A stretch of DNA of 64,000 nucleotides from Magallana gigas (lineage: Eukaryota): assembly GCF_963853765.1 (NCBI RefSeq), contig NC_088856.1, positions 27,342,001 through 27,406,000 of the forward strand, written 5' to 3'. Made by a program: the position numbers and the translations under genes. Below the pieces are notes generated by a model. It had not been told where the DNA came from. It was given only the letters and a program-made list of their open reading frames with translations, and made no database searches. Of this stretch, positions 15,414 through 53,732 are shown in pieces; within the stretch, counting starts at the first letter, position 1; every line of letters begins with the position of its first letter.

Positions 15414-17806
15414 ATGCGGAACCTTTTACTCCTTTGCTCTCTTAACTTAATTTGCAGGATTTCAAGTTCGTTTTTTATAACACATTTTTATTCAAAATGA
15501 CCATTTTTTTGCTCATGCTTTTAACAATAATATTAAAAAAAATGAATTTCATTTTATAATTTTCAGTCTGCATCACATCAGAACCTTGTACGTTTTCTCC
15601 ACATACCGATGGATGTGGAAACCTTGGATGGATGTGGCAATGTGGACACCGCAACCTATCCGTGATACCCCATGGTCAGCACATACCACCAGAATATACA
15701 AACACATCATTGACTTTGGATTTATCCGGAAACCGCTTTACCACACTATCCATGGAAACATTCAACACAATTGGCCCACTTCTCCGACAACGCATCGCAT
15801 CTCTTTTATTACGAAGTAACCCCATTCAATCTATTGGAAACTTTTCTTTTCAAGCTCTACGGAATCTTTGTGAATTGGATCTTTCTAGCTGTCGTCTGCA
15901 TACGGCGTCTTTTGAAATTAATTCGCTTGCAAACCTTAATAGGTTACAGATTTTGTGTCTGCATAGTAATTCATTTCAGGTCAGAGGATACCCCGATGTT
16001 GCTATTTCAATGGCAAGGACAATAGAAAACTTGACAATTGATGTGTTTGATGGATTTCAGTTTGGTTCGCCGTTTCAAAATTTGACTAATTTGAGGATTA
16101 TCAAATTTTTCACCGGAAACTCTAAGTTCCATTTAACAAATTCCACTTTCCGTGGGTTGATAACATCTCCAATAAGGAATTTGGACTTGAAGTTCAGAAA
16201 CATGGTATATTCTGATGTAAGTGATGAAATATTTTGTTCGTTTCCTTTTTTAAGAGGTGTACATATTGAGTTTGGAGGAATGTGTGATCTGAACGTAGCA
16301 TTAAATTCGTTGAAGTGTCTTCGAAATCGGTCAATGGACCACGTTGTTGCATACGAAAATAAACCTAATGTTGTTACAAAGGCAGTATTTCTCAATAATG
16401 AAAATTGTAAATATCTATTCAATATTTGTTCCAAAAGAGTTGAACTAAGTGAGAATCGTATCGCAGGAATTTCTGACAACCCTTTAGTTACACTTATGGG
16501 TCAATGCATGGAATACTTTGATATTTCATCAAACAGGATTGAATTTATTAACCCTTGGTACATGGTGGATTTTGTGACACGATATCCAAATCTACAGGTC
16601 ATAAACATAAGCTCAAATGACGACCATTGCAATTGTGAGACTTCCTGGGTTCGCAATCACCCACAAAATTCCGCGCTAATGACAAACAATGAAGAAATCA
16701 ATGAATTCCCATTCAACGGATTTGTCTCAAATATGTTTTTCACCAACATTTCAACGATGATACATTTCAAAAAGAGAGGGGTAATTACATTTAAGATTTC
16801 CGAAACAATAACAGTGTTGCAGCTTTCAAAAAATTACTTACACCCGTTAAATGCTCTCCCTCGTTTTAATTTAAGACTCAGTATCAATGCCAAGAATTTA
16901 AAAGAATTACACTTAGTACATACTACTTTGTCATGTGAAACATTGGCACCTATTGAGGCTCCTTCGTTGGAGATCATTGACATTTCCAACAACGACTGCA
17001 GCATTATAAAAAGAAACATTTTTATCTTTGCTTTAAAATTGAGAATTTTTTGGGCATCTTATTCCAATCTACGTTTTGCTAGTAGCTTTGAACACGGAAC
17101 ACTTTTCCGTGGCCTGAAAGAATTGCGGAAAGTTGATGTAAGTCGCAATTCAATAACATATTTGCCACCAACCATGTTTGAAGATCAGGAAAATTCACTA
17201 TCAACTGTGAATTTTGATTCTAATTTGTTCTCGACAATTCCCGTGTCAAATTTGAAAAACCTTACTCACTTATATATACGTCAAAATAAAATTTCTTTTT
17301 TTACCAGAAATGATATTGAAAAAATAATGTCAATGAAAAAAGCCATTATATTCATTGAAGGAAATCCAATAAGTTGCGAGTGTACACACATTCGGTCATT
17401 GAAATGGATGAAAGAAAACCAAGACAAGTTTGGAGATTTGAATAAAACTCTATGCATCAATAAAAAGGTGCTGCTGTCGACATTTGTTCACCAAGAGGTA
17501 TTTAAAAAGTTTGAGTTGATGTGTCAGTCAGATGCTTGGTTGATAGGTTCCACATTTGCTTTGTTTTTTGTTTTGACTATTTTGCTTACAACAGCAGTTG
17601 TTAAAAGGTATCGTGTCCATGTAGATTATGTTATTTTACGCCTGCGTAGTCGATGGAAAGGCGTCATTCACGTTTCAAATTCTGACGAGTTTCGGTTTGA
17701 TGCTTTCGTCACCTACACCGAGGAAGACTACCAACTCGCCTGCATTACTTTTTACCAAGCTCTGACCAGTCTGGGTTTCAAAATCAGCATACCCGCTAGT
17801 TTGTAA
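15414..17806 (+). CDS. Toll-like receptor TLR-A (exons 15414-15465, 15567-17806; ~763 aa): signal peptide, LRRs, LRR-CT, TM, but TIR truncated before the BB loop
   Basis: Signal exon MRNLLLLCSLNLICRIS with phase-1 intron; LRRs; NPISCEC LRR-CT; hydrophobic TM; TIR box1 FDAFVTY; ends FKISIPASL* where paralogs continue DKDFLPG. Confidence 0.88.
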
Positions 17807-18599
17807 CTAGTCAGTTGTGTCCATATTGTATTTAAAGACAACTATACTCTACTTTCACTGCACACATAGATCACGAAAATCAGTAGGCCATTGACGACAA
17901 TGTTCCTGTGAAATTGTTCACCTCTTGTGTACATGTATAATATAAAATATTTTGTTTTGACGTATTTTCTATGCCGAAAATTAGATAAACTCTGTTTTTT
18001 TAGTAACCCCCCCCCCCCCCCCCCCTAAGATTTGTTATACTTTTTTTTCAATATTTATTTTACAATGTCAGAGTAATGGTCACAAAATGTGAAAAAAGAT
18101 AACAGACGTAGTGTCTTTTTCTTATCTCGAAAGCTCGAAAGAATTCACAGAAGACGAATCACTGTACTGTCTTTATTACTATGGCTTTATTACTAATACG
18201 TCTGATATAGCTAAATACATAATTATGTACAGTTAATTAAACACATTTGATGATAGGTTACACAAATTACACAAGCAATTCAGAGATTACAATTGGCATT
18301 TGGCAGCCAACAGTTCAATTCAATGTCAATGCGCCATAAATTGCTGGTAACCCTGGAAGGAGGACAGCAGTTAACCAGCGATGGCTTGTATAGCTATTCT
18401 GTATCACTCGCAAGGACCGACGCAGAGATAAAGCCATGATGTTAAGAATACTGGATTCTCAGCTGAAAGCATACAAGTAAACCAGCAGCAAAAAAAATGA
18501 AACAAAATTAGTTAAATGTCAAGATGACAACATATGTGGGCAACCTAACCTAATAGTAGGAATTATTATTAAACACATAATCCAATAGAATTAAAGTAC

Positions 18600-19730: not shown

Positions 19731-22700
19731 TATTAATTGAATCTCATTGGATTATTAATTTTACCAATATACCTTGATTAGTAATAATTCTGCTTTTAAT
19801 GTCTTAACCAATAACCATATGACTATCATGTACATCGTATTTTGAAATCCTTGTAAAAATTGCAAAATATATCGTGGATGAATGCCCTCAACGTTAATGT
19901 ATTGGTTTTACTGAAATAGCCCTTTGCAAATTTGATAAATATACTTCAGAGGACGAAGTTACACCTTTTTATTTTTTTTAAATATGAATTGTTTTGGCAT
20001 CTCAAAAGAAACAAATATCGATTACCTACTTGTATAAAATGTGTCCATTGTTCGCTGAATGTAAACGAATGCTTGTTTTAATGCTTGGCCAATGAATTTG
20101 GTAATATAGTTCTAATAAAGTTTCATTTACACATATCTGTATTCATTTGTTCTAGCGTGTAGTTTAAAAAAGGACATGATTGTTTCTCCGGATCGAGAAG
20201 TGTTACAGATAATCTAATATATGAAATATATAATTTCTCTGCATTAGGTGAAAACAACTATGTACACTCATGTTCTCATTATGAACCTGAAAACAATTTC
20301 ATTTTATCCTAGATTGTTTGAATACAAATGTTTATCATATTGGTTGTTTTTACAAATACTTTGAAACGTTTTAACAGGTCAATAACTTCTACTTAAAAAA
20401 AAAGACAACCTAATCAAAAATATAAATCTCTTAATTGCTTCTCTCTGTTTAAACAACTAATCTATTCTAATAACAATACAGACATGCTTTTTAAACAAAT
20501 AAACAATTGTATTGTGAAAATGTATATAATTAGCGTTACATTGTTTGTCAGATTCAATATGATAATAAATAAAACTCTCCGCACTTGTTACAGCAGTTTT
20601 GTATTCTTTTGTATTCTTATGTATCTTTATTCCTAATTATAAATATATGTCTGTTGTTTGAATATTTTCTTATAAACTAAGGTTATCTAAACTGTTACAC
20701 TGTTAATTGAATGGACTTTGGTCGGACGTAGGAAAACAAGGACTTGTAAAAATTACCTGGAAATAAATGAAACCCAGAAAATTCCCAACAATAACACATA
20801 TGAAATATTTCCTGTATTAATGCCAACTTTCTAAGGTATAAAATTAATCAAACTTTCTCTCGTCAGTTCCTCGTCATTTTATCTTCCTTATTTTGTGAAA
20901 TAATAGATGGCACATCTCATCGTCAAGCATAACAATTTTTTCTTTCCGATTAAAGTTAAAACATCATTAATATATCTTGACAGACAAAAACTCATATCAG
21001 ACAAAGGAGATCGTAATGAGTAAGAGCCCGTCTTATGATATCGCGGTAGAAAAATCATTTTGTCGAAAAATCGATCATTAAGGAAATATTTCCAGAAACT
21101 AATGTTATTGTGAGTTTCCTCTATTGTATACCTCAGTGATGTTCAGCGTGTCTCTGTTTACTATGTTAGCAGAAATAACGCGATACCATAGAACTCGCGA
21201 TATGATAGGAAACAAGTATATTTAAGCGATGTTTTCACGTAATCAAAAAGAAAAAAAAATTACAACAACAGATCAAAGATAGATTGGTAGATTGGAGTGT
21301 CGACCCTTTTTACGTCCATACACACACATATATTCAAACACTTGCACTACCTTATCATGTTTACGTTCCACATACTATGGATTGCGTGTTAAGTGAGTGG
21401 AGAACTACTGCAGATATACCATCATAACACAGACAGTGTACTCAAAGATTAAAATGAGTTTTATAATGAGTTTAATAATGACATCACATCATAGTCTCAA
21501 AGTGCAACGTTAAAAGCAAAAATCAAAGTTCACACAGCCGGTTGTTATTACTGTGGCTCTTTCATTAATATGAACTTACCCTTAGGATGACAACGTGTGA
21601 ATGAATCACATTTGTAGACAAGACAAAAAGCTAAACATAAAGCATGGAATTCTTATTTTCGAAAGATATCACCTTATTACAGCAACGGAACTTGCAAACA
21701 AATTTTATTATGAGCTAACGCATGTTTCCCAATTTGCATGCACACACCACTGCAGTTTTGTGACTATATCTTAAAAATGATTAAAGGCTTAATAAGATCG
21801 CAACTCTTCTTTCTTTTCCTCTGATCTCAATTCTATATCTCACTCTAATCCCATACCCACCCTTTGAATACATAAACGTCATATGGCGTCAGTCTAAAAG
21901 AATTTACCTCGATAAACGTTATCACCTTTAACGTGCTTATTGCAATGTATTTGACAGATGTAATTTTGAAACTAATCTATTTATATAACGAAAAAGGTCC
22001 TTAAGACACTTTCAAACTAAGGACAACTTAACATAATTATTTATTCTGTAAATATACATACAATCAATAAAATGTTTGTCAGTGCTCGAATGATACATGT
22101 AGTTTCTTTTTTTTACTTGAAAGAAAAATTTCCTAATCATCTACATCAACATCTTTAATTTTGCTGTAAACTCTTGCGTATTTTTTTATATTAACCTCTT
22201 TTGTAGGTAAGTAAAGCATTTTCACATATATTTCATTATTTTCAAAGCTTAGCACAAATGTTTGCATCAAGTTTTGTTTTGCATTCAAAATAAAATAGAA
22301 TCTGAAACTATTAACTAAAGTATTCTTTCGAGCTTGATTATCGAATTTTATAAATTCACTTTATAGATATCCTCTTATTCTTTTGTTTCCCCAGAAAAGT
22401 AAAGTTAATCATTAACATCAAAACTTCCATCCGTGGCCTGGGATCGTTTGATTTTTATAATTTACTGTAATTAATTATTTATTCAATATTGAAATAAAAC
22501 CGTTAAATGTTACTCATCTTTAAGAAAGAATCTCGGATATTGAATAAGGGCAGATACATTTATGATTATAAATTGTCAGCTAAACGTTTTATATTTCTTC
22601 CAAATTTATTTTGATACAGTTTATAATACAAGTAAAGTAAGTGTGCGTTAAGAAAAAGAAAACCAAAACAGTAATATTTTTATGTATATAGTTCTAAAAT

Positions 22701-23028
22701 GTTTAGTCTGATTAAAATAAACATTATTGTTCATAATTTTTAGAACAATTTTTAAAACCATTATTTATTCTTTACTACAAGTATTTGATTGGTCATGCAG
22801 GTATCTGTCAATTTTCACAGAATTTTAAATACATGCATGTTAACTATGCACCATTTGAATTTCCTAAATGAACAGGAACTCTTCTAAATTTTGAAGCCTT
22901 TTGCTGGTTTTAAAATGGTTCCCGTTTGTAAAGAAACATAAATTGTGCATACTCAATATCCTTTCTCAACAAACGAACGTAGATAAACACTTAAAACGAA
23001 AAACCATCTACTAGTATCATTCCTCCAT

Positions 23029-23290
23029 GCTACTTCCTTTCTTTGGTTTTTATTTGTAATTTTCAAGGTTCTTGTTTATCAATGGTTTTGTATTTTTTAT
23101 ATTAACTTCTCAGCTATTATTTGTTTAATTATTTTTAAAAAATATAATGTTTTAGACGTAATCAAAAAAGCATTAGAACTTTGTTTCAGGTCAACGCAGT
23201 TGATAGATTTGGAAATGATGGATTGCTTTGGCGATGTGGCAACCGGAACCTATCTGAATTACTCGATCACATACCATTAAAATTCTCTTG
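23029..23290 (+). pseudogene. 5' relic of a D-subtype TLR (psiD1)
   Basis: Degenerate signal exon, then VIKKALELCFRSTQ-fs-DRFGNDGLLWRCGNRNLSELLDHIPLKFS*, homologous to TLR-D EVIRNSSKSCIMSMHTDGCGNRGLLWQCGNRNLSEIPEHIPLKY; start coordinate approximate. Confidence 0.8.
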
Positions 23291-23327
23291 AATCTTTACC
23301 GAAACAAAGATTCAGATAAAATATGAG

Positions 23328-23751
23328 TACTGTAAATGCCTAATTTTACGCGAGTTCTTAATTCGGTTTTATTTTGTATTAAATCGCGAAAAAATGAAAT
23401 CATGATAACCAATTTTTGCAATAAATTCCTTTAGTACAAAACTGTCTGAAGAATAAAAACGAGATTGTAAAATCCGCGGCTGTTGCTTTTCGCGATTTTA
23501 AGGAAAAATTAATTCCTCGCGTTAAATTAGGAATACTGTGGTTTCATCACTATTCGTTGAATACCAATTTTCGTTGTTTTCGTTGTAAAATTTATCCTTG
23601 AAATTAAATATTCATTGAACTGCAAATTCTACTAAAATTTTGTATTGATAGGGTCATTGGCCACGAATTTACGTATCCTTGAAACTGTGATTTTCACTTT
23701 ATCCACGAAAAATGATACCCTTGAATATTAATGAAACCACAGTGTACAGTA
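23328..23751. mobile_element. TA-target MITE with a second MITE (23534-23744) inserted in its right TIR
   Basis: Outer TACTGTAAATGCCTAATTTTACGCGAG ... CTCGCGTTAAATTAGGAA[insert]TACAGTA; inner TACTGTGGTTTCAT ... ATGAAACCACAGTG; empty paralogous site GAGTATTCTAG at ~35722. Confidence 0.85.
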
Positions 23752-24737
23752 TTCTAGGTAAGAATGGACGAAGGCACCATGTATTTTTCTTTTTTATCAG
23801 AACACATCTCTTTAAAGGACTGAATGATAGTGGCTATTTTAAAAACCATTTTTTAATCCACTGAGACCTCCTTAATTAAAGGAAATTAAAATCTACAATC
23901 ATAAAGTGTAAAAGAAAATGTTCAAATATTAAAGCAAAATTGTATAGAATTTTTCAAATTAATGTTTATATTGAGCCTTAAAATAATTTCTTAAAATTTC
24001 AGATAGATCTGATTGTATATATTGTTGACCACCCAGTACAATCAGACACTTTAAAGGTTTGCATTGACAGAATATTAATCGTCTATATACAAGCTTTGGC
24101 ATGGATACAAATTGCACATATGCGATTTCTATTGCATTTTTATATGTGCATGATTTCTTGATTCAGAAAGGAAAACTTTGCAAATGTGATAGAAGATTAG
24201 AGAAAATCCCGTTTAAAAAAATAATGTTTCCTTTTGAAAGAAAAAGGAGCAGAATTTTTCTGTTACTTTACAGAACATTTTTAAAAAATTTAGATTAACA
24301 CATTTTGACAGCATGATAGTATAAGTGTGTGAAGAAATTTCATTCTGTATTTGCCATTTCACAGCGATGTATTATTCATACGATGTACTCAAAGCTGATT
24401 TCTTAATTTTCTCATAAAATAATGACATCTTTTATCAAATAATAAAATTCCATGGTTTCAAAATCATTTTGAATAGAGGAAAAGCTTGGCTTATCTTTTG
24501 TTAAATATTATCTTTAATCTTAAATCTATTAACTGGAAATAAAATCATGCTCCAAAAACGTCCCTAATTATTGACAACTGATAACTACTAGTACATGTAA
24601 AAGCCGATTACTAGACAAGTACATTAACAAAAGCATGGACGTATCTTATATACCGTGCATCTGCATCATGCAGGCTTTAAAATCTCAAATATAAAAACAA
24701 AGAAAAAAGGAGATTTGAATTCTGAATAAATAAACAA

Positions 24738-25318
24738 AAGGACTATGTGCGGTATGGTCAAATATCTGCCCCCGATTTTAACCAATTTTTAAATAGTATC
24801 GTATAAAAATAAAATCTTCACAAATTATTGTATAGAGGATGCCTATAACTATAATAATGATTTTAGTCATTATTGCTCTTTCGCTGTGTGTCTATGACGT
24901 CAACTTAAAGGCCCAATTCCGACAAATTTGCAAACAAATGAAAATATTCTCATTTTTGCTCTATATTTTGCATTCAGAAGTATAGAGCGCAGGTCTGCTC
25001 AAGTGCGATTTTAACATATGGCTTTTTTCAGATAGTTATACACATTATACTAAAATATGGCACTTCAGCAAGCCTGCGCTCGATGTTTCCCAGTCGAAAA
25101 ACCATCGGAAAACACCCATATTTTGCTACAAAACATCAATTTATCAAAATAATGCAATATTCATGACGTCATTTCTACATTATGACGTCACTGTGGTGAT
25201 AACCTTTTAAACCTTTATTTCCAATATGATTTAAACTATCTTTCACCTTATTTTAAAGCTCTTTCTAAAACTTTGATTTTGGGGGGCAAAAATTGCATAA
25301 AACCGCACTTAGTCCTTT
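24738..25318. mobile_element. Kolobok-like TIR element ~190 bp upstream of the TLR-B start codon
   Basis: AAAGGACTATGTGCGGT..TGCCCCC versus GGGGGGCAAAAATTGCATAAAACCGCACTTAGTCCTTTA; absent from the paralogous upstream region of TLR-C (~36680-36740). Confidence 0.7.
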
Positions 25319-25506: not shown

Positions 25507-28209
25507 ATGCGGATTCTTCTACTCCCGTGCTCTCTTTATTTAATTTGCAGGATCTCAAGTTTGTTTGCTTAATTGTATATTTTGATTTAAAAGGATATTC
25601 TTTATTAATGTTTTTCAATTTTAAATAAGATGACATTCATTTTATAATTTTTAGACTGGGTCACACCAGAACCCTGTACGTTTTCCCCGCACACCGATGG
25701 ATGTGGAAACCATGGATGGATGTGGCAATGCGGACACCGTAACCTATCTGTGATACCCAATGGTCAGCACATACCACCAGAATATACAAGGACATCATTG
25801 ACATTGGACTTATCCAAAAACAGTTTTACCGCAATATCCAGAAAAACATTCAATACCATTGGCCAATTTCTTCGATCAAGAATCGCATCTCTTTCATTAC
25901 GGGGCAACCCTATTCAATCTATTGGAAATTTTTCTTTCAAAGCTCTATGGAATCTTTGTGAATTAGATCTTTCTAGCTGTCGTCTGCATACGGAGTCTTT
26001 TGAAATTAATTCACTTGCGAATCTGAATAAATTGAACATTTTATGTCTTCATAGTAATTCATTTCAGGCCAGAGGATACCCCGATGTTGCTATTTCAAAG
26101 GCAAGGACAATAGAAAACTTGACAATTGATGTGTTTGATGGATTTCAGTTTGGTTCGTCGTTTCAAAACTTAACTAATTTGAGAATTATAGAATTTTTCA
26201 CCGGAAACTCTATGTTCCATTTAACAAATTCTACTTTCATCGGGTTGATAAAATCTCCAATAACAAATTTGGAATTGAAATTCAGAAACATGATACATTG
26301 TGATGTCAGTGAAGATGTATTTTGTTCGTTTCCTTTTTTAAGAGGTGTACATATTGCGTTTAGAGGAATGTGTGATCTGAACGTAGCATTAAATTCGTTG
26401 AAGTGTCTTCAAAATCGGACCATGGACCACATTATTGTAAACGACAATAAACCAATGATTGTCACAAAGCAAGTGTTCCTCAATAATGAAAATTGCAAAT
26501 ACCTATTCAATATTTGCTCCAAAAGAGTTGAACTCAATGGAAATCGTATCGCAGGAATTTCTGACAACCCTTTAAACACAGTTATGGGTCAATGCGTGGA
26601 ATACTTTGATATTTCATCAAACAGGATCGAATGGATCAATCCCCAGATTTTAGTGGATTTTTTGACACGATATCCAAATCTACAGGTCATAAATATAAGC
26701 TCAAATAATGAACTTTGCAATTGTGAGACATCCTGGCACAACCCTTACTCACAGGTAGTAGCTTCAAGAATGACTGACAATAATGAAACCAATGAGTTTT
26801 CATCCGATGTATTTGTTGTGAATGAGTTTTTCTCAAACATTTCAAGTAAAGTACTTTTCATCAAGAGAGGTGTTATAACTATTAAGATTTCCGAAATAAT
26901 AACAGTGCTGCAGCTCTCAAAAATGTACCTACATATATTCAGTACTTTACCTCGTTATAATTTAATACTGACTATCAATGCCAAAAATTTAAAAGAATTA
27001 TACATGGTGCATAGTAATTTCTCATGTCAATCTTTGGCACCTATTCAGGCTCCTTCGTTGGAAATAATTGACATTTCCAATAACGACTGCAGCATAATAG
27101 GAGCAAACATTTTTAATTTTACTTTAAAATTAAGAGTTTTTTTGGCATCGAATTCAAATCTTCGTTTTGCTAGTAGTCTTCGATACGGAACCCTTTTCCA
27201 TGACCTGAAAAAATTACAGAAAGTTAATGTTAGTCGCAATTCAATAACATATTTGCCACCAACCATGTTTGAAGATCAGCAAAATTCGCTGTTAACTGTG
27301 AATTTGGATTCTAATCTGTTCTCAACAATTCCCGTGTCAAATTTGAAAAATCTTACTCACTTGTATTTGCGTCAAAACAAAATTTCATTCTTCACAAAAA
27401 ATGATATTGAAAGAGTAATGTCAATGGAAAAGGCTGTTGTTTTCATTGAAGGAAACCCAATAAGTTGCGAGTGCACACACATTTGGTCATTGAAATGGAT
27501 GAAAGAAAACCAAGACAGATTTGTTGATTTAAATAAAACTTTATGCATCAACACAAACGTGTTACTTTCGACATTTGGAAACCAAGAGGTATTTGAAAAG
27601 TTTGAAATGATGTGTCAGTCAGATGCTTGGTTGATAGGTTCAATTTTTGCATTTGTTTTTGTAATTGTTGTTTTGCTTACTTCAGCAGCTATCAAACAAT
27701 ATCGTGTCCATGTCGATTATGTTATCTTGCGTATGCGTAGTCGATGGAAAGGCGTCATACACGTTGCAAATTCGGACGATTTTCCGTTTGATGCTTTCGT
27801 CAGCTACACCGAGGAAGATTACCCTGCATGCATTCCTTTTTACCAAGCTCTCACCAGTCTGGGTTTCAAAATCAGCATACCCGACAAAGATTTTTTACCC
27901 GGAATATCTGAAGCGGAACAACTACTCAAATGCATGGATCAGAGTCGAAAAGTTGTCATTATTGTTACCGAAAATTTTCTAGAAAACGGCTGGAACTCCT
28001 ACGCTGTGCAAATGGTTGTAACTCATGCTTTTCACAACCAAAGGGAACGGTCGATTATAGTGATAATTAAAGATGACATTCCCATCGAGCGATTGCCAAG
28101 GGATCTGAAATATATCTGGTGGACCATTGTCAGCATAAGATGGCCAGATGGAAATGAGAACATGGATTTATTCTGGGAAGAGATTGCTGCTGCTTTACGC
28201 ACTAATTAA
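25507..28209 (+). CDS. Toll-like receptor TLR-B, full length (exons 25507-25558, 25655-28209; ~868 aa)
   Basis: Signal exon MRILLLPCSLYLICRIS, phase-1 GT-AG intron, LRRs, LRR-CT, TM, complete TIR (FDAFVSY, PDKDFLPG, SRKVVIIV, FWEEI). Confidence 0.93.
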
Positions 28210-29450: not shown

Positions 29451-31889
29451 AATTTAAAAGAATGCCTTTTTTTTTTATACAGAAGTCTTTATGAATATAT
29501 CAAACGCAGGAACTGATGTTTCATTTACGCATATATGTATCATTCAAGTGGTCTACCTTGATGTCTTAGAAAAAGTACGTGTTTCTTTGGATCTGAAATA
29601 TTATAGATACACTAGTGAAATTTTTTTTTTTGGGTATTGGCTGGTAAACAAAGCTTGTTATGGTCAAATCAAACGATAACAATGTATATAACTTTCTCAT
29701 GATAAATTTGAAAACAAATTTTATTATTTTTTTTTTAGATTGTCTTTTATAGAATAAAAATGTATTTATTTGTTATTTTGTCCTTTTCTTTCTTTCTTTT
29801 TTTTTTTTTTTTTTTTTTTACAAAGAATAATAAACATCTAAAACTTTAAATTGCTAGTCTGTTTAAAGAATTAATTTCAGTTAATAACGATACAACTACA
29901 TAATTCTTCATACGGTCTTGCAAAATGCTTGTGATTAGTAATGTACTTTTTTCACATGCAAAAAAATAAATAACAGATAAAAACTCTGCACATTTGTAAA
30001 ACTACTTGCGCATTGTTTTTTTTTATTAATTTTCTTTTATCAATGCTGTCATATGATTAATTGATTAGAAATTGAGTTTGTCTCAAATTTGTCATTGAAT
30101 AAATGTAGGTCGGACGCAGGAAAACAAGGACATATAATAAGAACCTTGAAATCATTTATACCCATAAAATCCCCAACCACTATCACATTTGAAATATTTC
30201 CTGAATTAATGCATACTTTCTACGGAACAAAGCAATCTTTCTCTTGTCAGTTCCTTGTCATTTTTTAAATTAATTTTGTAAATTCATAAACGATATTTCC
30301 CGTAATCAAGCCTCGTAATTTCCTTTCTTTGTATTTACAGATAAAACATCATAGATGTAGCTATACTTCAGACTAACACACAGAAGAGAAACAAGTACTA
30401 CCATTACCTTATTAGAATAAAAGCGATATTTTAGAATAAAAATTACATGTAAAAGATTTGGTAGATTGGAGTGATTACTTCTTTTCACCCCTTTACACTT
30501 TCCACTCAAAAACTTCACAACCTCATCTGATATCGCATCTCACTTTCTTCGCACCTATTCGCAACCTTTTCTCCCACTTTAATTTAACTCACCCTCCTGA
30601 TAACTTAATCGTCATCTTTAACTTCGGTCTGGACGTAATTACCTTGATAAACGAAATCGCCTTTAAGTGCAAAAATTTAGATACATGTATACTTTATTTC
30701 CGTGCTGTAAAATTGAACATTTGCATTTAACTTGCTAACTGCCATATCCTAAGACAAACCTATTATTTGTAACAAATCAATTTCCACCTGATTCATTTTA
30801 ACTCTCTATGATAATGTGTCCCATACTAAACTTATTCAAACTTTTACAGTATTCATTAAATCAATGAAATACTTGTCATTGCTATTACAGTTTTTTTTCT
30901 TTCCTAAAATATTTTCTTACTATTTAATTACATGTATAAAAGTCTTAAATAAAAATTCCCTTTAAATTCGAGAATATTTTTGTATACCGGTATTAAACTT
31001 AATTTAGTCAGTAAGAAGTGTAATGTTTGCACTTATCTCTCACCAGTTTTATAGCATGATATCAATTTTAAGTCATAATTTTTTGTTTTGCATTCAATTT
31101 TAAAAAAACTCAAAATAACTAAAATATTTCTTTGTGCATGTTTATCAGATTTGTACACTCCAGTAATTTACTTTGTTTCCCCTGCAAGCATTAGTGTAGT
31201 AACTCATTAAATTCAAAACTTTCTTTTGAGCTTTCAGATTGTGTTACTTTTTATGATTAACTGTTATTATTTATTCAAATCTGAATTAAAACCACTATCT
31301 TTTATTTTTATTGCAATGGGAATATTTTTTCTATTTTGTTTACTAGCACCGGAGATTTACTCTCGGATATAAAATAAGGGCCGTAACAATGATTCGTGCA
31401 AGTATTTTGTCAGTTGAGCATATCAGAAGAGATTTGTTCAACCTTGATACAATTCATATATATAATTACAAGAAACAGGTATAGATGGGACAGCTTTTTA
31501 TAAATCAAAGAAGATCACTATTGTTTCTACGTATTGATTTGGTTTTAAACAGTATATCCTGATTAAAATAAAGATAAAACTTCATAGCTTGTTGAAGACA
31601 TTTTTATCACTATAATACATTTTTAACCCCAGATATTGATATATTATTTTTTATTACTTTAGGTCATACAGATATATGTTAATTAAGACGGAGTAAAATA
31701 CATACATTATAACTATCAATGAGATTTGATTCCTCGAAGTTTGTCTTATTAAACCGGAAATTTTGAGTTTTTTTGTCGTGTTCCAATATTAACTTCCTTT
31801 AAAAAAGATATCTAAATTTTATATACTCAATATCCCGCCCCCCCCCCAAAAAACCCAGAAAATTAAATACACGAGACGGAAAAGCCAAC

Positions 31890-32272
31890 TGTCATTCAGC
31901 CATGCATATTATCTTTTTTCTTTAATTTGTTTTTAGTTCAGGTATTGTTTATATTTACCTATCATATTTTTAGATAGTATATGTTTAACACATTTTTATA
32001 AAGTTTGATGAAGGAGAAATCAAAAGCTATTCAGAACCTTATTTAAATTCAACATACATCGATTGATGAGAAAATATGGCATTGTTGTGGATATGTGGAA
32101 ATCCAACCTATCTGAAATACCCGATCAGATTTCATTGAAGCACAAAGAAGAAAAAATAATATTAGACCTATCAGGGAACCAATTTACAAAAATTTTCTAG
32201 GAAACGTTTTACAATATTGACCCATATGTTCCATCAGCATTAAATATATCTTATTACAGAATAGCCCTCATT
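31890..32272 (+). pseudogene. 5' relic of a D-subtype TLR (psiD2)
   Basis: GTCATTCAGCCATGC and TTAGTTCAG|GTAT match TLR-D exon 1 context; then AACCTATCTGAAATACCCGATCAGATT..ATTAGACCTATCAGGGAACCAATTTACAA..GAAACGTTTTACAATATTGACCCA aligns to TLR-D 51272-51395 with stops and indels. Confidence 0.8.
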
Positions 32273-36400: not shown

Positions 36401-36911
36401 ATATCATAGATCAAAATTGAGGCGAAAATTGACCAATGTTTGTTGAATTTTACATGAAACCCTTTATCGTAAAATTAGAAATAAAACTATTTTCAAATTA
36501 TCTTGCTTGAATAATTATTGAAAACTGATAATTACATGACAAAGTTAATTCGATAAAATTAACGAAAACATCGAAAGTATCTTATATACTCTAAATCTAT
36601 GTCATGCATGCTTTAAAATCCCTTTTATACAAACACACTAAGAAAAAAAAGATTTGAATTGAGAATAAATAAATAACTAGATAAAAAAGTAAATATCCTA
36701 AGATATAGATATTACTATGTACACGAGCGCATTGCCATAAAGTGAACGTTGTAATTTGTAATGATCTTCCTGTTATCCTTATCAATTCATGTAAATCGCG
36801 CAATCCATGTATTTATTTAATTGATTTTTTTGTGTCTACTATCTATAAGAAAGAGTAAGTTGTGTCACATTGAAACTCCCACAATATCAGCTTGTCTTGT
36901 TTTATGCAGCA

Positions 36912-39575
36912 ATGTGGATTCTTTTACTCTTAATTTGGAGGGTTTCAGGTTAGTTTATATATAAATTTTAAATTGAAGTGTTTTCTTTGTTCATGCATTT
37001 TAATGTGAAATAAGATGTCTCCGTTTTATAATTTTCAGACTGCATCACACCGGAACCTTGTTTGTTTTCTCCACATACCGATGGATGTGGAAACCATGGA
37101 TGGATGTGGCAATGCGGACACCGTAACCTATCTGTGATACCCAATGGTCAGCACATACCATCAGAATATACAAACACATCGTTGACCGTTGATTTATCCG
37201 AAAACCGCTTTACCGCAATATCCCTGGAAACATTCAACACCATTGACTCTGTTCTCCGGTTGTGCATCACATCTCTTTCCTTACGGGGCAATCCCATTCA
37301 ATCTATTGGAAACTTTTCTTTTCAAGCTCTACATAATCTTTGTGAATTGGATCTTTCAAGCTGTCGTCTGCATATGACATCATTTGAAATTTATTCGTTC
37401 GCAAATCTTAATAGTCTGAAAATTTTATGTCTTCATGACAATTCATTTCGGGGGAGCGGTTACCCCGATGTTGCTATTTCAAAGGCAAAGACAACAGAAA
37501 ACTTGACAATTGATGTATTTGACGGATTTCAGTTTAGTTCATCGTTTCAAAATTTAACTAAAATGAGCATTATCAAATTTTTCACTGGAAGATCTAAGTT
37601 CCATTTAACCAATTCCACTTTTCGCGGGTTGATAAAATCTCCTATAATAAACTTGGAAATGATATTTAGATACAGGGTTTATGGTGATGTCAGTGAAGAT
37701 ATCTTTTGTTCTTTCCCATTTCTGAAAGGGGTGCAGATTCAGTTTGGAGGAATGTGTGATATAAGCGTAGCATTAAAATCTTTAAAGTGTCTACAAAATC
37801 GAACTATGGACCACATTGTTGCAAACGGAAATGAGCCAATGATTGCTAAAAAAGCACTGTTTCTTGATAATGAAAATTGTAAATATCTCTTTAATATTTG
37901 TTCCAAAAGAGTTGAATTAAGTGCAAATCGTATCGTGGGAATTTATTACAATCTTTTGAACACTGTGATGGGTCAGTGCATGGAATACTTTGACATTTCA
38001 TCAAACAGCATCGTATATCTCAACATATGGTACTTGACAGATTTTTTGACACGATATCCAAATCTGCAGGTATTTAACTATAGCTCAAATAATGACAATT
38101 GTAATTGTGATGGTTCCTTGCAGTATCCTTTCCAACAACTTGCAGCAACAAGAATGATTGAAACCGAAACATTTTCACAGAATGCATCCAATATTTTTGT
38201 ATCTAACAATACAAGAAAAACACATTTTAAAAAAAGAGTGATAATAACATTTAAAATGTCGGAAAAACTAACAGTGTTGCAGGTCTCCAAAAATCATGTG
38301 AAACTGTTTACTTTTCCCTCACTTTTTGATTTAGCTGTTATTGCCAAAAATTTAAAAGAATTATATTTAAATCATATTAACTTGCCATTTAAATATATGT
38401 TACCTATTCAAGCCCCTTCCTTGGAGATTATCGACATTTCGTACAATGATTGCAGGGAAATAAAAGCAGACTTTTTAATGTATACTTTAAAACTGAGAAT
38501 ATTTTTGGCATCTTATACAAATTTAAGCTATGCTGGTACTCTTAAAAATGGAACATATTTCCGTGGATTAAATAACCTTTGCATAGCTGACTTAAGCCGC
38601 AATTTGTTAACTTATATGCCAGCAGCAATGTTCGTAGATCAAAAACATTCGCTATTTACTATCAATTTAGATTTTAATTTGCTCTCGACCATTCCTGTGT
38701 CAAATTTGAAAAATCTTAAGCGCTTATATTTACGTCAAAACAAAATCTCATTTTTTTCAAGAAATGCTATTGAAAAAGTATTATCAAATGAAAAGGCTGT
38801 TGTTTTCATTGAAGGGAATCCGATAAGTTGCGAATGCACACACATTTGGTCACTGAAATGGATGAAAGAAAACCAAGACAGGTTTGGAGATTTAAATAAA
38901 ACCTTTTGCATCAACAAAAAAGTGTTTCTGTCGATGTTCCTTCGCCAGAAGGTATTTGAAAAGTTTGAGTTGGAGTGTCAATCAGATGCATGGTTAATAG
39001 GTACCTTCTTTGCATTTGTGTTGCTCATGATTGTTTTACTTACTTCAGCAGTTGTCAAACGGTATCGTGTTCATATCGATTACGTTATTTTACGCCTTCG
39101 TAGTCGATGGAAAGGCGTCATGCACGTTTCGAATTCGGACGAGTTTCGGTTTGATGCTTTCGTCTCCTACACCGAGGAAGACTACCAGCTCGCTTGCATT
39201 ACTTTTTACCAAGCTCTGACCAGTCTGGGTTTCAAAATCAGTTTACCTGATAAAGACTTTTTACCCGGAATATCTAAATCGGAACAACTACTTCAATGCA
39301 TTGACCAGAGTCGAAAAGTTGTCATTATTGTCACCGAAAGTTTTTTAGAAAACGGCTGGAACTCGTACGCGGTGCAAATGGTTGTTACCCATGCTTTTCA
39401 TAACCAAAGGGAACGGTCAATTATAGTAGTAATCAAAGACGACATTTCCATCGCGAGATTGCCTAGAGACCTGAAATATATTTGGTGGTCTATAGTCAGC
39501 ATCAGATGGCCAGATGGAAACGAGGACTTGAATAAATTCTGGGAAGAAATTGTTGCCGCTTTACGCACTGATTAA
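36912..39575 (+). CDS. Toll-like receptor TLR-C, full length (exons 36912-36948, 37039-39575; ~857 aa)
   Basis: Short signal exon MWILLLLIWRVS, phase-1 intron, LRRs, LRR-CT, TM, complete TIR. Confidence 0.93.
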
Positions 39576-41179: not shown

Positions 41180-43099
41180 TAGAATGTGAACAAAGATGTT
41201 ATCAACAAAGTTTATTAGTCTGATTGCAATTCTTTGGAAATTTAAAAATATGTCAATTTTTTCAAAGCACTAAAAGACTAATTCTGAGATATTGCTTATT
41301 TATTAATTGTCTTCTATTTGAACGACTTAGCTTTACCCATGAGACATTCAAAAAATAAACTAATACATATGTAACAAAAGTAGAAAAGTATTTGAAATAT
41401 ATGTATGATATGAAATACATCCAGATCTTATACAGCAAAAAATGCTGGAACAAAATGGTCCGATAACTAAGTCTTACTTAATTAAGTCACATTACGGTAT
41501 AACATATATTTAGTCTCAAGACGGGCATAAATATGTTTACAATTGAGTTAACAAGGATGATGATAATGCTGCTTTTAAATGACCCCTTCGTGAATTATTT
41601 TAAGAATGAACAAACGATGGTGTCTTTGAGAGGTCAGCATTTACATCATTGATTTAGGTACTGATTTTAAATCAGTGATTGGTACGACATACTGATGTTC
41701 AATGGTGAACGTTATGTCATCATCTGTCATGTTTATTTGTTTGTTTGTTTTTGGTAGGTGTTTGGTTTTTTGGAAAAGGGGGGGGGGCTTTAGTAATCTA
41801 AATCATCAGTATGCAGATTATCAAAGGAAAATGTTTGCCGAAGTTCAATATTCTAATAATGTTCAATAAAAGAATTATTTAACAATCTTTTCTATTGCCA
41901 AAATGCACGTGTAACAATGTAATTTTTGCCACTTGCAAAAAACAAACAAACAAAAAAACCAACCAAAAACCAAAAACAAATAAAAACAAAACAAAAGAAA
42001 AACAAAACAGTCATAACAATATACGTATTTGTCAATATGAATAATTTTCGTTATTCTTTATTTCAATGCCTATGGCTTTATGTTCAGATAGTAAACAAGT
42101 CTAAACTGTTAATTTTGAAAAAATGAACTTTGATCGGACACAGTAAAACAAAGATAAGTACTATGTACATAAAAGCCAATCAAACCCAGAAAATTCCCAA
42201 ATTTATCAAATACGAAATATTTCCTGAACTTTCCTTCCGTGTATTGTGTTTAATTGATAATGTCTCTCGTAAAAGTATACTCTTCATTTTTTTTATTTAC
42301 AGTGACCCTAAAACATTTAATTTCCTGCATTAGGCAGAAATTACATTTGATTAACAACCAAATTTTTTTTAATACCTGAAAGCTGATAGAAATACAAAAA
42401 AAAAAATGATATCAACGGTACTAAAATATATATTTATGTCATATTTCATCATCATTTTCTTTAACGGTTTTTTGGCCGGGTAATGTAACGAAGAAATCAA
42501 AGTTTTGAAAAGTGTTAATGCAATAATTGAATTGGAATAAAACTAAAATGGAAATGTTTCTTTAGTCTTAAAATGTGTCACATTGATCATTTTTTACCGT
42601 ACACAACAAAACAGATACGAAAATGCATGGACATGCAGGACAAAGTTAGAAAAGCAAGGTGAAGGATTTTTTTAATAAAATGAATGGTAACCGAAAATAG
42701 GAAACGGCTAAAAAAATCACTATTGTACGTTGAAAAAATGTCGACAAAGATAATAATTTATTTTTTAAAAAGGCGCTTTTGATCCGTTAGCGTTCTAAAT
42801 GTTATGGTTAATCTATCAAACTCTTCTCTATTTAAATGAAATTCACATTTCATAATTGATTGATTAGGTGTGGGCTTTTCAAGACCATACATGTATTTAA
42901 AGAATATGGACCGATTGTTTGTAACCACTGATGATTGAAACATATTTTGCTTAACAAAAAGATCTGACGAAATAAAAAGAAAACCAAAGTAAAGCAAAAT
43001 ATGGTTGTGGTATAGAAATATTGACAGCGTTAGATACAATATTGAGACATATTATTTTATTAAATATGGTAAAATAATGTAAAAGATGGTGCATTAAAT

Positions 43100-50753: not shown

Positions 50754-51015
50754 ATTTGCATCAAAATTAAAAAGAAGCATACAATCCTGCAGATATGTGA
50801 TTTATCATATCATTGTGGTTCCTTTACTTGTGACTTAAGGTTGGTGAACATAATTTTCATGAAATATTAATTTTAATCCTTTTTAACAGTTTGTATTATT
50901 AGAGCATTAAAGTGTTTTAATAAATTTGTTTTCATGATTTTAGATTTTAAAATATAAAAACCTTGTACGTTTTTTGATGAACCACAGTAAAGAGAAAACC
51001 AACGATCATTCCGTC

Positions 51016-53732
51016 ATGCAAATTTCTTTACTTTTTGGCTTGTTATCTTTAATTGGTAAGGATTTTAGTTCAGGTATGTTTTTTATCTATATTTTCATAT
51101 AATTATTTTTCTCAGATGATATTTGTTTAATTCAACTTAAAAATAATGTAACTATACAACATTTTCTTTCTTTGATAAAGAAGTAATCAGAAATTCATCA
51201 AAATCTTGTATCATGTCAATGCACACCGATGGATGTGGAAATCGTGGACTGTTGTGGCAATGTGGCAACCGTAACCTATCTGAAATACCTGAGCACATTC
51301 CATTAAAATATAAAGGAGAATTTGTGACATTAGACCTATCTGAGAATCAGTTTACAAGAATCACAATGGAAACTTTTCACAATATTGACCCACGTGTTCG
51401 ATCTCGCATTACATCTATTTCATTACGGAATAACCCTATTAGACATATAGGAAACTTTTCTTTTCAGTGTCTTTGGCGTTTATGTGAATTGGATCTTTCT
51501 ACATGTCACCTTCAGAGGACGTCTTTTGAAATAAACTCCTTTGGAAATTCCCTTCTAAATCAATTAAAAATATTAAGACTGCATAATAACTCATTTCGTG
51601 GCAATGGATACCCTGATACTGCTATTTCGAAAGCGAAACTGTTAGAAAACTTGACCCTCGATGTGTTTGGTGGTTTTACTTTCAGTTCATATTTTCAAAA
51701 TTTAACGAAACTGAAGAAAATTGAATTCATCACCGGAAATTCTAAATTCCATCTAACGAATTCCACTTTCCGCGGGTTGATAAAATCTCCTATAGTAAAC
51801 CTGGAAATGATTTTTAAATTCAGGGTATATAGTGATGTCAGTGACGATATCTTCTGTTCGTTTCCATTTCTGAAAGCGGTGCATATTGAGTTTGGAGGAA
51901 TGTGTGATTTGAATGTGGTATTAAAATCTTTAAAGTGTCTTCAACATCGGACAATGGACCGCATTGTTGCATACAACAATAATCCAATGATTGCCAAAAA
52001 TGCAGTATATCTCGATAATGAAAATTGTAAATACCTTTTCAATATCTGTTCCAGAAGAGTTGAACTAATAAAGAATCGTATTGTGGGAATTTATGACAAT
52101 CTTTTGAGCACAGTCATGGGTCAGTGCATGGAATACTTCGATGTTTCATCAAACAGGATTAGAGTTATCAACCCCTGGTACATGCTGGATTTTTTGACAC
52201 GATATCCAAATCTGCAGGTCTTCAACTATAGCTCAAATGCTGATCAATGCAATTGTGAATCTCCCAGGTATAGCCATCGCCCAACACTTGCAGCTTTGAG
52301 AATGATCGACTGTGAAAACGATAAATTTTCACAAATTGCTTCAAATATGTTTGTATCCAACGTTTCAGGTAAAACATATCTTAAAAAGAGAGGGTTAATG
52401 GCATTTAAGATTTCCGAAAAAATAAGAGTGTTAAATTTTTCCAAAAACTATTTAAACCGATTAACATATCCTTTACCTTTTGATATCTCGCTTAATGCCA
52501 TGAATTTAAAAGAATTGTATGTAGTTCGTACTAACTTCCCATGCAAATACATGGCACCCATTCAAACTCCTTTCTTGGAGATTCTCGACATTTCCAACAA
52601 TGACTGCAGCGAAATGAAAATGCGAATTTTAATGTTTGCCAAGAAACTACGGATTTTTGTGGCATCTAATATAAACCTAAGCTTTGCTGGTAGTTTAAAA
52701 TATGGAAAACTTTTCCGTGGTGTTATGAGCCTTTGCAAAGTTGACTTAAGTCGCAATTCGTTAATATATTTGCCACCAGCCATGTTTAAAGATCAGGAAA
52801 AATCTTTATTAACAGCGAATTTTGATTATAATCTGTTTTCAACAATTCCTGTTTCAAATTTGAGAAACCTTACTCGGTTGTATTTACGTCATAATAAAAT
52901 TCCATTCTTCACTAGAACGGATTTTGAAAAAATATCGACATTGGGAAAGTCTGTTGTTTTTATTGAAGGAAATCCGATAAATTGCGAGTGTACAAACATT
53001 TTGTCACTGAACTGGATGAAAGAAAATCAAGACAAGTTTGGGGATTTGAATAAAACTCTATGCATCAACCAAAATGTGTTCCTGTCGAACTTTTTTCAGG
53101 AACAGACATTTAAAAAGTTTGAGTTGATATGCCAGTCAGATGTTTGGTTGTTAGGTTCCTCATTTGCATTGGTTTTTGTTATAATCATTTTGCTTACGAC
53201 AGCAGCTATTAAAAGATATCGTGTTCATGTTGATTATATTATTTTACGCATGCGCAGTCGATGGAAAGGGGTTATGTGCATGGCGAATTCTGAAAAGTTC
53301 CGATTTGATGCTTTCGTCACATACACTGAGGAAGACTACCAACTCGCCTGCATTACTTTTTACCAAACTCTCGTCCGTCTTGGTTTCAAAATCAGTATGC
53401 CTGATAAAGACTTTTTACCCGGAATATCTGAAGCGAAACAACTACTTCAATGCATCGACCAGAGTCGAAAAGTTGTCATTATTGTCACCGAAAATTTTCT
53501 AGAAAACGGCTGGAACTCGTATGCTGTGCAAATGGTGGTTACTCATGCTTTTCACAACCAAAGGGAACGGTCGATTATAGTGATAATTAAAGATGACATT
53601 TCCCTCGAGCGGTTACCGCGAGACCTGAAATATATTTGGTGGTCCATTGTCAGCATAAGATGGCCAAATGGAGACGAGACTATGGATAAATTCTGCGAGG
53701 AGATCTGTGCTGCTTTACGCCCCGATCCATAA
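51016..53732 (+). CDS. Toll-like receptor TLR-D, full length, second subtype (exons 51016-51073, 51181-53732; ~869 aa)
   Basis: Signal exon MQISLLFGLLSLIGKDFSS, phase-1 GT-AG intron in frame with the 839-aa ORF; LRRs, LRR-CT, TM, complete TIR. Confidence 0.92.

What the first reader, a model, noticed from the sequence alone, without database searches (positions are those of the whole stretch)
15414..53732. The TLR array is a repeated two-subtype cassette: A, psiD1, B, psiD2, C, D
Seen: between the A-type genes lie two unannotated 5' relics (~23.0-23.3 kb, ~31.9-32.3 kb) that match TLR-D rather than A/B/C, in N-terminal peptide (GLLW.CGNRNLSE..HIPLK) and in the upstream context (AAAACC..TCATTC..CATGC). 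Non-coding DNA at 20.1-23.3 kb aligns with 29.5-32.3 kb, and 23.3-25.5 kb with 35.7-36.9 kb. Inference: the duplicated unit was a ~10-11-kb [A-type + D-type] gene pair, at least six TLR copies existed, and the D subtype was lost in two of three units. This suggests dosage selection on one partner of a possibly cooperating receptor pair.
Basis: partly seen in the sequence, partly recalled or inferred. Interest (0 to 1): 0.7.

Follow-up and report, generated by a model that had tools for sequence, protein, structure and literature searches.

The report
Oyster TLR array with dead D-type stubs
Four tandem Toll-like receptor genes of a Pacific-oyster-like genome were built by copying a two-part unit, and two short dead stubs of the second gene type remain between them, which is an ordinary case of gain, loss and sequence exchange in an immune gene family.

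Summary
Four two-exon TLR genes lie on the + strand: A, B, C and D. Two short 5' fragments (22986-23288 and 31867-32268) match D. Each keeps D's 5'UTR, start codon, signal-peptide exon, intron and the first 126 or 254 nt of exon 2, and both carry stops and frameshifts. They group with D (support 96/95). Locus-specific spacer blocks recur in the same order in all three units, so a [A-type gene, spacer block X, D-type 5' module] unit was duplicated.

- Six complete copies are not required. One truncation followed by re-duplication of [A-type + stub] fits as well or better.
- Both stubs end against transposon sequence. The psiD2 stub ends 154 bp before assembly gap 32422-32560, so what follows it is unknown.
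- The two subtypes hold only for the 5' end. Over codons about 170-550, C groups with D (100/99), which points to gene conversion.
- A has lost most of its TIR domain.
- D's counterpart in a C. angulata assembly carries a frameshift and a stop.
- The C. virginica array shows no relics between the genes examined, and its copies form their own clade.

Nothing supports a cooperating receptor pair or dosage selection. This is birth-and-death evolution in a tandem immune array, already known in outline for oysters.

The parts
15414..17806 (+). TLR-A. Exon 1 is 15414-15465, exon 2 starts at 15567, stop at 17806. It has the A-type 5' module. An internal deletion of about 345 bp removes the C-terminal 105 aa or so of the TIR domain and the original stop.
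   Evidence: (no TIR hit)
20417..21003 (+). Spacer block X, unit 1. Its conserved core is about 20627-20863.
   Evidence: (found only at three places, all inside this array)
21795..22985 (+). Further unit-1 spacer blocks, collinear with 30530-31859 of unit 2.
22986..23288 (+). psiD1, an unprocessed D-type stub. It keeps the 5'UTR, the exon-1 ATG at 23027 (in-frame TAA at codon 11), the intron and about 126 nt of exon 2, with a 1-nt deletion and a stop.
23318..23743 (.). Transposon sequence lying about 30 bp after the end of psiD1. The 23533-23743 part is a young element with many copies.
   Evidence: loose ends at 23533/23743
23744..24736 (+). Block upstream of B shared only with the block upstream of C (35755-36673). 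It has no counterpart upstream of A or downstream of D.
24737..25318 (.). Young 582-bp high-copy transposon inserted upstream of B.
25507..28209 (+). TLR-B. Exon 1 is 25507-25558, the intron 25559-25654 (GT..AG), exon 2 is 25655-28209. It is intact, and it is transcribed and spliced.
   Evidence: joint 25558|25655
29833..30391 (+). Spacer block X, unit 2.
31867..32268 (+). psiD2, an unprocessed D-type stub. It keeps the 5'UTR, the exon-1 ATG at 31902 (TAA at codon 8), a donor-like GT, the intron and about 254 nt of exon 2, with a frameshift and a stop.
32272..33450 (.). Repeat sequence that begins right at the end of psiD2, then assembly gap 32422-32560, then a young high-copy element at 32561-33450.
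35755..36673 (+). Block upstream of C, homologous to 23744-24736.
   Evidence: E 8e-50
36912..39575 (+). TLR-C. Exon 1 is 36912-36948 and exon 2 starts at 37039. Its 5' and 3' parts are A-type, but the central stretch of about 37581-38685 groups with D.
42051..42270 (+). Spacer block X, unit 3.
51016..53732 (+). TLR-D. Exon 1 is 51016-51073 and encodes MQISLLFGLLSLIGKDFSS. Exon 2 is inferred to start at 51184. The gene is intact here, and its central stretch of about 51729-52839 groups with C.
   Evidence: (splice sites inferred, not shown by RNA)

Best explanation
The array is a lineage-specific tandem expansion in a Crassostrea gigas/angulata-like genome. It grew by duplicating a two-part unit, in this order: an A-type TLR gene, a spacer containing block X, then a D-type TLR gene.

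My committed reading has three steps.
1. One D-type copy became a 5' stub. It kept its promoter region, signal-peptide exon, intron and the start of exon 2. The cause was either a deletion or a duplication breakpoint inside the gene.
2. The [A-type + stub] unit was then copied once more by unequal crossing-over. That produced units 1 and 2 (A-psiD1 and B-psiD2) next to the intact unit 3 (C-D).
3. Afterwards transposons piled up at both stub ends and psiD1 lost about 130 nt more. A stretch of about 1.1 kb of ectodomain sequence was exchanged between C and a D-type copy by gene conversion. A lost most of its TIR domain through a 345-bp deletion.

The stubs are dead, unprocessed pseudogene fragments with no demonstrated function.

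Shown: the homologies, their order, the lesions, the mosaic trees and the splicing of B. Inferred: the number and order of events.
For: - Same marker order in three units. Markers X and the B/C-upstream block are locus-specific, not dispersed repeats.
- The stubs keep the D-type promoter-proximal sequence, exon 1 and the intron, so they are copies made at the DNA level.
- The clade (D, psiD1, psiD2) has support 96/95, and psiD1+psiD2 are sisters at 72/74 in the best tree.
- Both stubs carry stops and frameshifts.
- Both stubs stop within the first 85 codons or so of exon 2. Each is followed, after transposon sequence, by the same block (23744 ~ 35755), which suggests one shared junction.
- Neutral divergence between unit-1 and unit-2 spacers (63-74% identity) agrees with dS(A,B) = 0.39.
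- Full-length tree is (D,(C,(A,B))). The C. virginica copies form a separate clade, so the expansion came after the two species split.
- Segment trees and AU tests show the C/D mosaic.
- Three independent studies hold 76-79% of the words sampled from 22.9-28.3 kb. A C. angulata assembly matches the D region at 99%. The region is therefore not an artefact of one assembly.
Against: - The stubs differ in length (126 and 254 nt of exon 2), so an extra deletion is needed.
- Support for psiD1+psiD2 as sisters is weak, and D+psiD1 or D+psiD2 is not rejected (p 0.27).
- AU tests placing the relics with A/B/C are only borderline (p about 0.05), because just 130-270 nt can be aligned with an outgroup.
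- Part of the 2.3 kb between the post-gap element and the C-upstream block was not shown to be repeat-derived. It could be a remnant that unit 1 lacks.
- The gap hides an unknown amount of sequence after psiD2.
- Segment limits for the mosaic tests were chosen after looking at the site patterns.
Confidence: 0.55

Rival explanations
1. Three complete [A-type + D-type] pairs once existed, making six genes. The D-type copy was then lost independently in two units, because selection favoured a higher dose of the A-type partner of a cooperating (heterodimeric) receptor pair.
For: The unit order and the D-type identity of both stubs hold. The different stub lengths fit two separate deletions. The D-like central stretch of C could have been copied from a once-complete neighbour.
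Against: - No residue of any D-type 3' part was found anywhere in the spacers (with E up to 10).
- Both losses would have to end before the same downstream block.
- A, one of the supposedly favoured A-type copies, has itself lost most of its TIR.
- D is disabled in a C. angulata assembly.
- In C. virginica the copies form one clade of their own and no relics lie between the genes examined.
- The ectodomain of C is D-like, so the two types are not coherent partners at the protein level.
- No binding evidence of any kind exists.
Confidence: 0.15
2. psiD2 is not a short stub. It is a longer, transposon-interrupted pseudogene, or even a nearly complete gene copy, whose remainder lies in the unassembled sequence at gap 32422-32560.
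For: D-like sequence stops at 32268, exactly where a dispersed repeat starts at 32272. The gap follows 154 bp later. Sequence right after the gap is a young high-copy element cut by the gap. The gap length is only an estimate.
Against: The part of psiD2 that can be seen is already heavily decayed: 54.5% aa identity, a stop in exon 1, a frameshift and a further stop. It is dead in any case. No TLR-like sequence appears between 32561 and the promoter region of C. psiD1 has no gap nearby and is also a short stub.
Confidence: 0.1
3. The true history is ((A,B),(C,D)), with C and D as sister duplicates. The A-type appearance of C's 5' and 3' parts would then be due to conversion from A or B, so the three-unit cassette is partly an illusion.
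For: In codons 170-550 the C+D clade has support 100/99, and the A+B+C clade is rejected (p 0.0016).
Against: C's A-type character extends far beyond the gene on both sides. Upstream there is a block of about 1 kb shared with B's upstream region, plus exon 1 and the intron. Downstream there is block X. Conversion of several kb of diverged non-coding flanks is much less likely than one internal stretch of about 1.1 kb. C+D is rejected in codons 0-170 (p 0.015) and 550-720 (p 0.029).
Confidence: 0.1

Closest known systems
Tandem TLR arrays of Crassostrea gigas (Zhang et al. 2015, Sci Rep 5:8693, PMC4346834)
   Same: That paper reports 83 TLR genes, 57 of them in tandem arrays, and nine pseudogenes. 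It attributes the expansion to local tandem duplication within the lineage. The present array is one such cluster. B and C are 97-98% identical to nr proteins named toll-like receptor 4 [C. gigas].
   Different: The passages of that paper retrieved by my term search do not mention unit structure, short 5' stubs between genes or mosaic gene trees. The pseudogenes counted there are frameshifted full-length genes, not 300-400-bp fragments.
Birth-and-death evolution with interlocus gene conversion in tandem immune receptor families. An example is the vertebrate TLR1/TLR6/TLR10 cluster, where conversion between TLR1 and TLR6 has been described. This comparison is from my own knowledge and was not checked here.
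   Same: Tandem paralogues, pseudogenised members, and a conversion stretch that makes different gene segments give different trees.
   Different: In the vertebrate cluster the paralogues are known to pair with TLR2. No partner relation is known or indicated here, and the oyster expansion is independent and much younger.
C. virginica orthologous array (assembly GCA_053477285.1, loci L031 and L032)
   Same: Same TLR lineage (54-55% aa identity to D), same two-exon structure, same orientation, and spacing of about 11 kb.
   Different: Each repeat of about 11 kb holds one gene. No relics appear between the genes at E<1e-3. The copies form their own clade. No non-coding homology with the window was detected.

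Membership tests
Toll-like receptor (LRR ectodomain, transmembrane helix, TIR domain) | Leucine-rich-repeat ectodomain | tested here: met
   LRR_8, LRR_4 and LRR_1 hits above the Pfam cut-offs in A, B, C and D.
Toll-like receptor (LRR ectodomain, transmembrane helix, TIR domain) | Cytoplasmic TIR domain | tested here: met
   Met for B, C and D: TIR_2 scores 36-42 bits (cut-off 28) and TIR 32-34 bits (cut-off 21.3). Not met for A, which keeps only about 35 TIR residues before a 345-bp deletion.
Toll-like receptor (LRR ectodomain, transmembrane helix, TIR domain) | Signal peptide and a single transmembrane helix | tested here: inconclusive
   Hydrophobic first exons were found for A, B, C and D. 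B's exon 1 is joined to exon 2 in an RNA-derived contig and matches the nr protein. A hydrophobic stretch precedes the TIR in the alignment. No signal-peptide or transmembrane predictor was run, and D's splice sites are inferred.
Unprocessed (duplicative) pseudogene fragment of the D lineage | Homology to the parent gene beyond chance, closest to D | tested here: met
   nhmmer E 3e-24 and 4e-33 against D. tblastn E 1e-7 and 2e-11, with higher identity to D than to A/B/C. Clade with D at 96/95. AU tests of the alternatives are borderline, p about 0.05.
Unprocessed (duplicative) pseudogene fragment of the D lineage | Keeps the intron and upstream region, and carries disabling lesions | tested here: met
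   Upstream region, exon 1 and intron align with D. There are in-frame stops in exon 1 of both stubs, a 1-nt deletion in psiD1 and a frameshift in psiD2, further stops, and truncation.
Unprocessed (duplicative) pseudogene fragment of the D lineage | Not transcribed | tested here: inconclusive
   Depth over 22900-23261 (most of psiD1) is zero in four runs; one read-level signal appears in the 23262-23442 bin of X22. B itself is covered only at depth 0-1 in the two raw-read samples and 5-15 in the contig sets.
Tandem duplication of a two-gene unit (cassette) | The same order of several homologous, locus-specific markers in every unit | tested here: met
   A-type gene, then block X, then the D-type 5' module, three times. 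Units 1 and 2 share further blocks. X is found only at these three sites in the 564-Mb genome.
Tandem duplication of a two-gene unit (cassette) | Matching trees for the two gene lineages | tested here: inconclusive
   The A-type tree is ((A,B),C), with 100/100 for A+B and 81/89 for A+B+C. The D-type tree has psiD1+psiD2 at only 72/74, and the alternatives are not rejected.
Tandem duplication of a two-gene unit (cassette) | Every unit once held a complete D-type gene | not testable with these tools
   No 3' remnants were found. Testing this needs orthologous arrays from other Crassostrea species or haplotypes.
Interlocus gene conversion between C and a D-type copy | A gene segment whose tree differs significantly from the tree of both flanks | tested here: met
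   Codons 0-170: A+B+C at 99/99, C+D rejected (p 0.015). Codons 170-550: C+D at 100/99, A+B+C rejected (p 0.0016). Codons 550-720: C+D rejected (p 0.029). Site patterns agree. Caveat: the segment limits were chosen after seeing the patterns.
Cooperating receptor pair kept as a genetic unit | Both partners kept intact together across copies and related species | tested here: not met
   Two of the three D-type copies are stubs. A has lost most of its TIR. The D counterpart in a C. angulata assembly carries a 1-nt deletion and a premature stop. In C. virginica the copies form one clade and no relics lie between the genes examined.
Cooperating receptor pair kept as a genetic unit | Physical interaction between the two proteins | not tested
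   I ran no complex prediction, because the report makes no binding claim.

The most novel reading that the evidence does not exclude
The D-like central ectodomain of C (about 37581-38685) was copied by gene conversion from the now-lost D-type neighbour just upstream (the ancestor of psiD2), not from D itself. If so, psiD2 was once a full-length gene, and its ligand-binding region survives inside an A-type gene. The depth of the C-D split within this stretch, relative to the A-B split, is about 1.5. That is at least as old as the split of unit 3 from units 1 and 2 outside the stretch (about 1.1-1.3, from the branch lengths). This fits such a donor, but it fits an early conversion from D equally well.
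Probability: 0.15. Interest if true: 0.4.

Novelty: new member of a known kind. Interest (0 to 1): 0.27.

Why it matters
This locus gives a base-level history of one oyster TLR cluster. It shows which DNA was copied and what was lost. It also shows that neighbouring paralogues exchanged ectodomain sequence, and that transposons mark the broken ends. Together these show how the large, lineage-specific TLR repertoire of oysters turns over.

There are practical consequences for annotation and for expression or association studies at this locus:
- A is TIR-less.
- Trees built from C depend on which gene segment is used.
- D is intact here but broken in a close relative.
- The two stubs could attract mis-mapped reads.

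The locus does not open a new kind of biology, and it gives no support to a paired-receptor mechanism.

Tried and rejected
- Search for other TLR remnants. tblastn with all four proteins at E up to 10, and nhmmer with 400-bp tiles, found nothing beyond the two 5' stubs. This covered the spacers and 10 kb on either side of the window.
- Block X as a transposon: rejected. It occurs only at the three array sites in the genome.
- The 6-bp indel as a shared derived marker of D and the stubs: rejected. The C. virginica genes share that state, so it is ancestral.
- Non-coding homology with the C. virginica array, to find out which 5' module is ancestral: none detected.
- Known RNA families in the window: none at gathering thresholds.
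- Faster evolution on A's branch as a sign of a long-dead gene: not seen. The ratio of non-synonymous to synonymous changes unique to each branch is 0.91 for A, against 0.77-0.92 for the others.
- Genome-wide copy counts for long spacer stretches were swamped by a few high-copy elements, because only 40 candidates are scored per search. The repeat map of the spacers is therefore incomplete, notably for 33450-33807 and 34980-35714.
- RNA evidence for psiD1: no reads over most of it, but the depth was too low to count as absence. The first request for sequencing runs failed and was repeated.
The C. angulata locus I fetched covers only D plus 3 kb on each side.
- Earlier notes of the scan: nothing was listed near this finding. 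One note on the TIR-deleted A matches what I saw.

Full report
WHAT IS THERE

The window is chromosome-scale contig C4, positions 27,342,001-27,406,000, of a 564-Mb genome. Its TLR proteins are 97-98% identical to nr entries from Crassostrea gigas and C. angulata. The D region is 99% identical in DNA to a C. angulata assembly.

Four long ORFs lie on the + strand and are 76-84% identical in DNA. All have LRR domains. B, C and D have a TIR domain and A does not.

Each gene has a small first exon for a signal peptide, an intron of roughly 90-110 nt, and one large exon. For B, a contig from an RNA-type run joins 25558 to 25655 across a GT..AG intron, and the product matches the nr protein. The splice sites of D are inferred by frame and homology only: exon 1 is 51016-51073 and exon 2 starts at 51184.

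THE RELICS

Two fragments, psiD1 (22986-23288) and psiD2 (31867-32268), match D.
- By tblastn, psiD1 is 76% identical to D over 25 aa, and psiD2 is 54.5% identical over 55 aa. Identity to A, B and C is 36-46%.
- By nhmmer, the matches to D have E 3e-24 and 4e-33. They start about 35-40 nt before the D-type start codon.
- The alignment shows that each relic keeps the D-type 5'UTR, start codon, signal-peptide exon, intron and the first 126 nt (psiD1) or 254 nt (psiD2) of exon 2.
- Both are dead. psiD1 has a TAA at codon 11 of exon 1, and psiD2 has one at codon 8. In exon 2, psiD1 has a 1-nt deletion and psiD2 a frameshift, and both have further stops.
- Because they keep the intron and the promoter-proximal sequence, they are copies made at the DNA level, not retrocopies.
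- With three C. virginica genes as outgroup, D, psiD1 and psiD2 form a clade with support 96/95. Trees that force the relics to join A/B/C are worse by 6-7 log-likelihood units, with AU p about 0.05. That is only borderline, because just 130-270 nt can be aligned.
- The 6-bp difference the relics share with D is also present in C. virginica. It is therefore the ancestral state and carries no weight.

THE REPEATED UNIT

A search with 400-bp tiles found collinear blocks between the A-B and B-C intervals:
- 20417-21003 ~ 29833-30391
- 21795-21962 ~ 30530-30689
- 22053-22983 ~ 30850-31859
- the relics themselves
- 23738-24737 ~ 35714-36676

A reversed-sequence control gave only six low-complexity hits.

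The first block, which I call X, has a third copy at 42051-42270 between C and D. X occurs nowhere else in the genome.

Homology is patchy because transposons of several ages fill the spacers:
- 18137-18783, 19136-19455
- 23318-23743, 24737-25318
- 28272-29441
- 32272 onward, 32561-33450
- 33807-34300, 34314-34510, 34751-34977
(boundaries at 23533/23743 and 24737/25318 come from loose read ends).

THE GAPS

Neither gap touches an ORF or the homologous part of a relic.

Gap 32422-32560 matters all the same. D-like sequence of psiD2 ends at 32268 and a dispersed repeat starts at 32272. The first base after the gap belongs to a young element with many copies at 93-96% identity. The gap therefore lies in repeat sequence, its true length is unknown, and what follows psiD2 cannot be stated for certain. 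No TLR-like sequence is seen from 32561 up to C's promoter region. I did not look up the missing letters elsewhere.

HOW MANY COMPLETE GENES?

The map does not require six.
- psiD1 also ends about 30 bp before transposon sequence.
- After the transposons, both stubs are followed by the same block (23744 ~ 35755, E 8e-50). That block has no counterpart upstream of A or downstream of D.
- Both stubs stop within the first 85 codons or so of exon 2.
- No 3' fragment of a D-type gene remains anywhere.

The simplest account is one truncated D-type copy, produced either by a deletion or by a duplication whose end fell inside the gene. The [A-type + stub] unit was then copied by unequal crossing-over, and psiD1 later lost a further 130 nt or so.

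Several results agree with this account. The best tree pairs psiD1 with psiD2, though only at 72/74. A and B are the closest genes (dS 0.39, against 0.60-0.62 to C and 0.69-0.78 to D). The unit-1 and unit-2 spacers are 63-74% identical, which matches dS(A,B).

Two independent deletions from a six-gene stage remain possible. I give the single-truncation reading 0.55.

THE SUBTYPES ARE A 5' FEATURE

Trees by gene segment, rooted with C. virginica, disagree with one another:
- Codons 0-170: (D,(A,B,C)) at 99/99, and C+D is rejected (p 0.015).
- Codons 170-550: ((A,B),(C,D)) at 100/99, and A+B+C is rejected (p 0.0016).
- Codons 550-720: C+D is again rejected (p 0.029).
Searches show the same pattern. 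The segment limits were set after viewing the site patterns, so these p values are somewhat optimistic.

C carries A-type sequence for kilobases on both sides: the upstream block, exon 1 and the intron on one side, and block X on the other. The central stretch is therefore best read as a gene-conversion stretch of about 1.1 kb from a D-type donor (C about 37581-38685, D about 51729-52839).

The ligand-binding part of C is thus D-like, so 'A-type' and 'D-type' are not two coherent kinds of protein.

STATE OF THE OTHER MEMBERS

A has a clean deletion of about 345 bp. It joins the early TIR region to the 3'UTR and removes about 105 residues. The substitution pattern on A's branch is like that of the others, so the deletion is either recent or tolerated.

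D is intact here. In the C. angulata assembly GCA_025612915.2, its counterpart has a 1-nt deletion in an A5 run (window equivalent 52798) and a C>T change that creates a stop in the TIR (53460). The deletion could be a sequencing error. The substitution is less likely to be one.

In C. virginica the orthologous array has one gene per 11 kb or so, no relics between the genes examined, and copies that form their own clade.

JUDGEMENT

The claims of six complete copies and of dosage selection on one partner of a cooperating pair are not supported, and several facts speak against a paired function.

The overall picture is birth-and-death evolution with gene conversion and transposon turnover in a tandem immune-receptor array. 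In outline this is already described for C. gigas: 83 TLRs, 57 in tandem arrays, nine pseudogenes (PMC4346834). It is a well-resolved example rather than a new kind of system.

Noticed in passing
window 17795-17841: TLR-A has an internal deletion of about 345 bp. It joins the early TIR region directly to 3'UTR sequence that matches B's 28230-28273. The ORF ends three codons later, leaving an intact ectodomain and transmembrane part without most of the TIR. The scan's first stage also noted this separately (s1-385418).
   Followed up: partly
window 20627-20863, 30035-30207, 42051-42270: Block X is the best-conserved non-coding piece of the spacers, at about 71-74% pairwise identity, and it is unique to this array. 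Its core holds a conserved AAAATTCCC-like motif whose reverse complement resembles a Rel/NF-kB site. It may be a regulatory element. The motif reading is by eye only.
   Followed up: partly
window 44120-44880 and 48471-49210 versus 60555-61064 and 62300-63345: A second local duplication at 72-75% identity flanks D. Parts of the C-D spacer recur 7-10 kb downstream of D. The 62590-63350 piece matches only 48489-49202 in the whole genome. No TLR relic follows it within the next 10 kb.
   Followed up: partly
L033:3001-5560 (C. angulata GCA_025612915.2, counterpart of D): The D orthologue is 99% identical in DNA but carries a 1-nt deletion in an A5 run and a C>T stop in the TIR region. It is annotated as a 532-aa uncharacterised protein.
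   Followed up: yes
L031 and L032 (C. virginica GCA_053477285.1, CM130317.1, 35.79-35.82 Mb): The orthologous array has at least four TLR genes at a spacing of about 11 kb, one gene per unit. The first called product is only 394 aa.
   Followed up: partly
window 24737-25318, 23533-23743 and 32561-33450: Three young transposon families, each with dozens of scored copies at 89-97% identity and thousands of first-look candidates. The first two are abundantly represented in poly(A) RNA-seq reads from elsewhere in the genome.
   Followed up: partly
window 50558-50643 and 50669-50753: An 86-bp direct repeat at 97.7% identity lies 270-460 bp upstream of D's start codon. It is also present in the C. 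angulata locus.
   Followed up: no
window 56325-56687: A tandem repeat with a period of about 62 bp lies downstream of D, with inverted partial copies near 60.4 kb.
   Followed up: no
window 5502-5792 (-): An exon encoding part of the C-terminal domain of a CpG-binding protein (PF12269, E 3e-26). This is consistent with a CXXC1-like gene flanking the array.
   Followed up: partly
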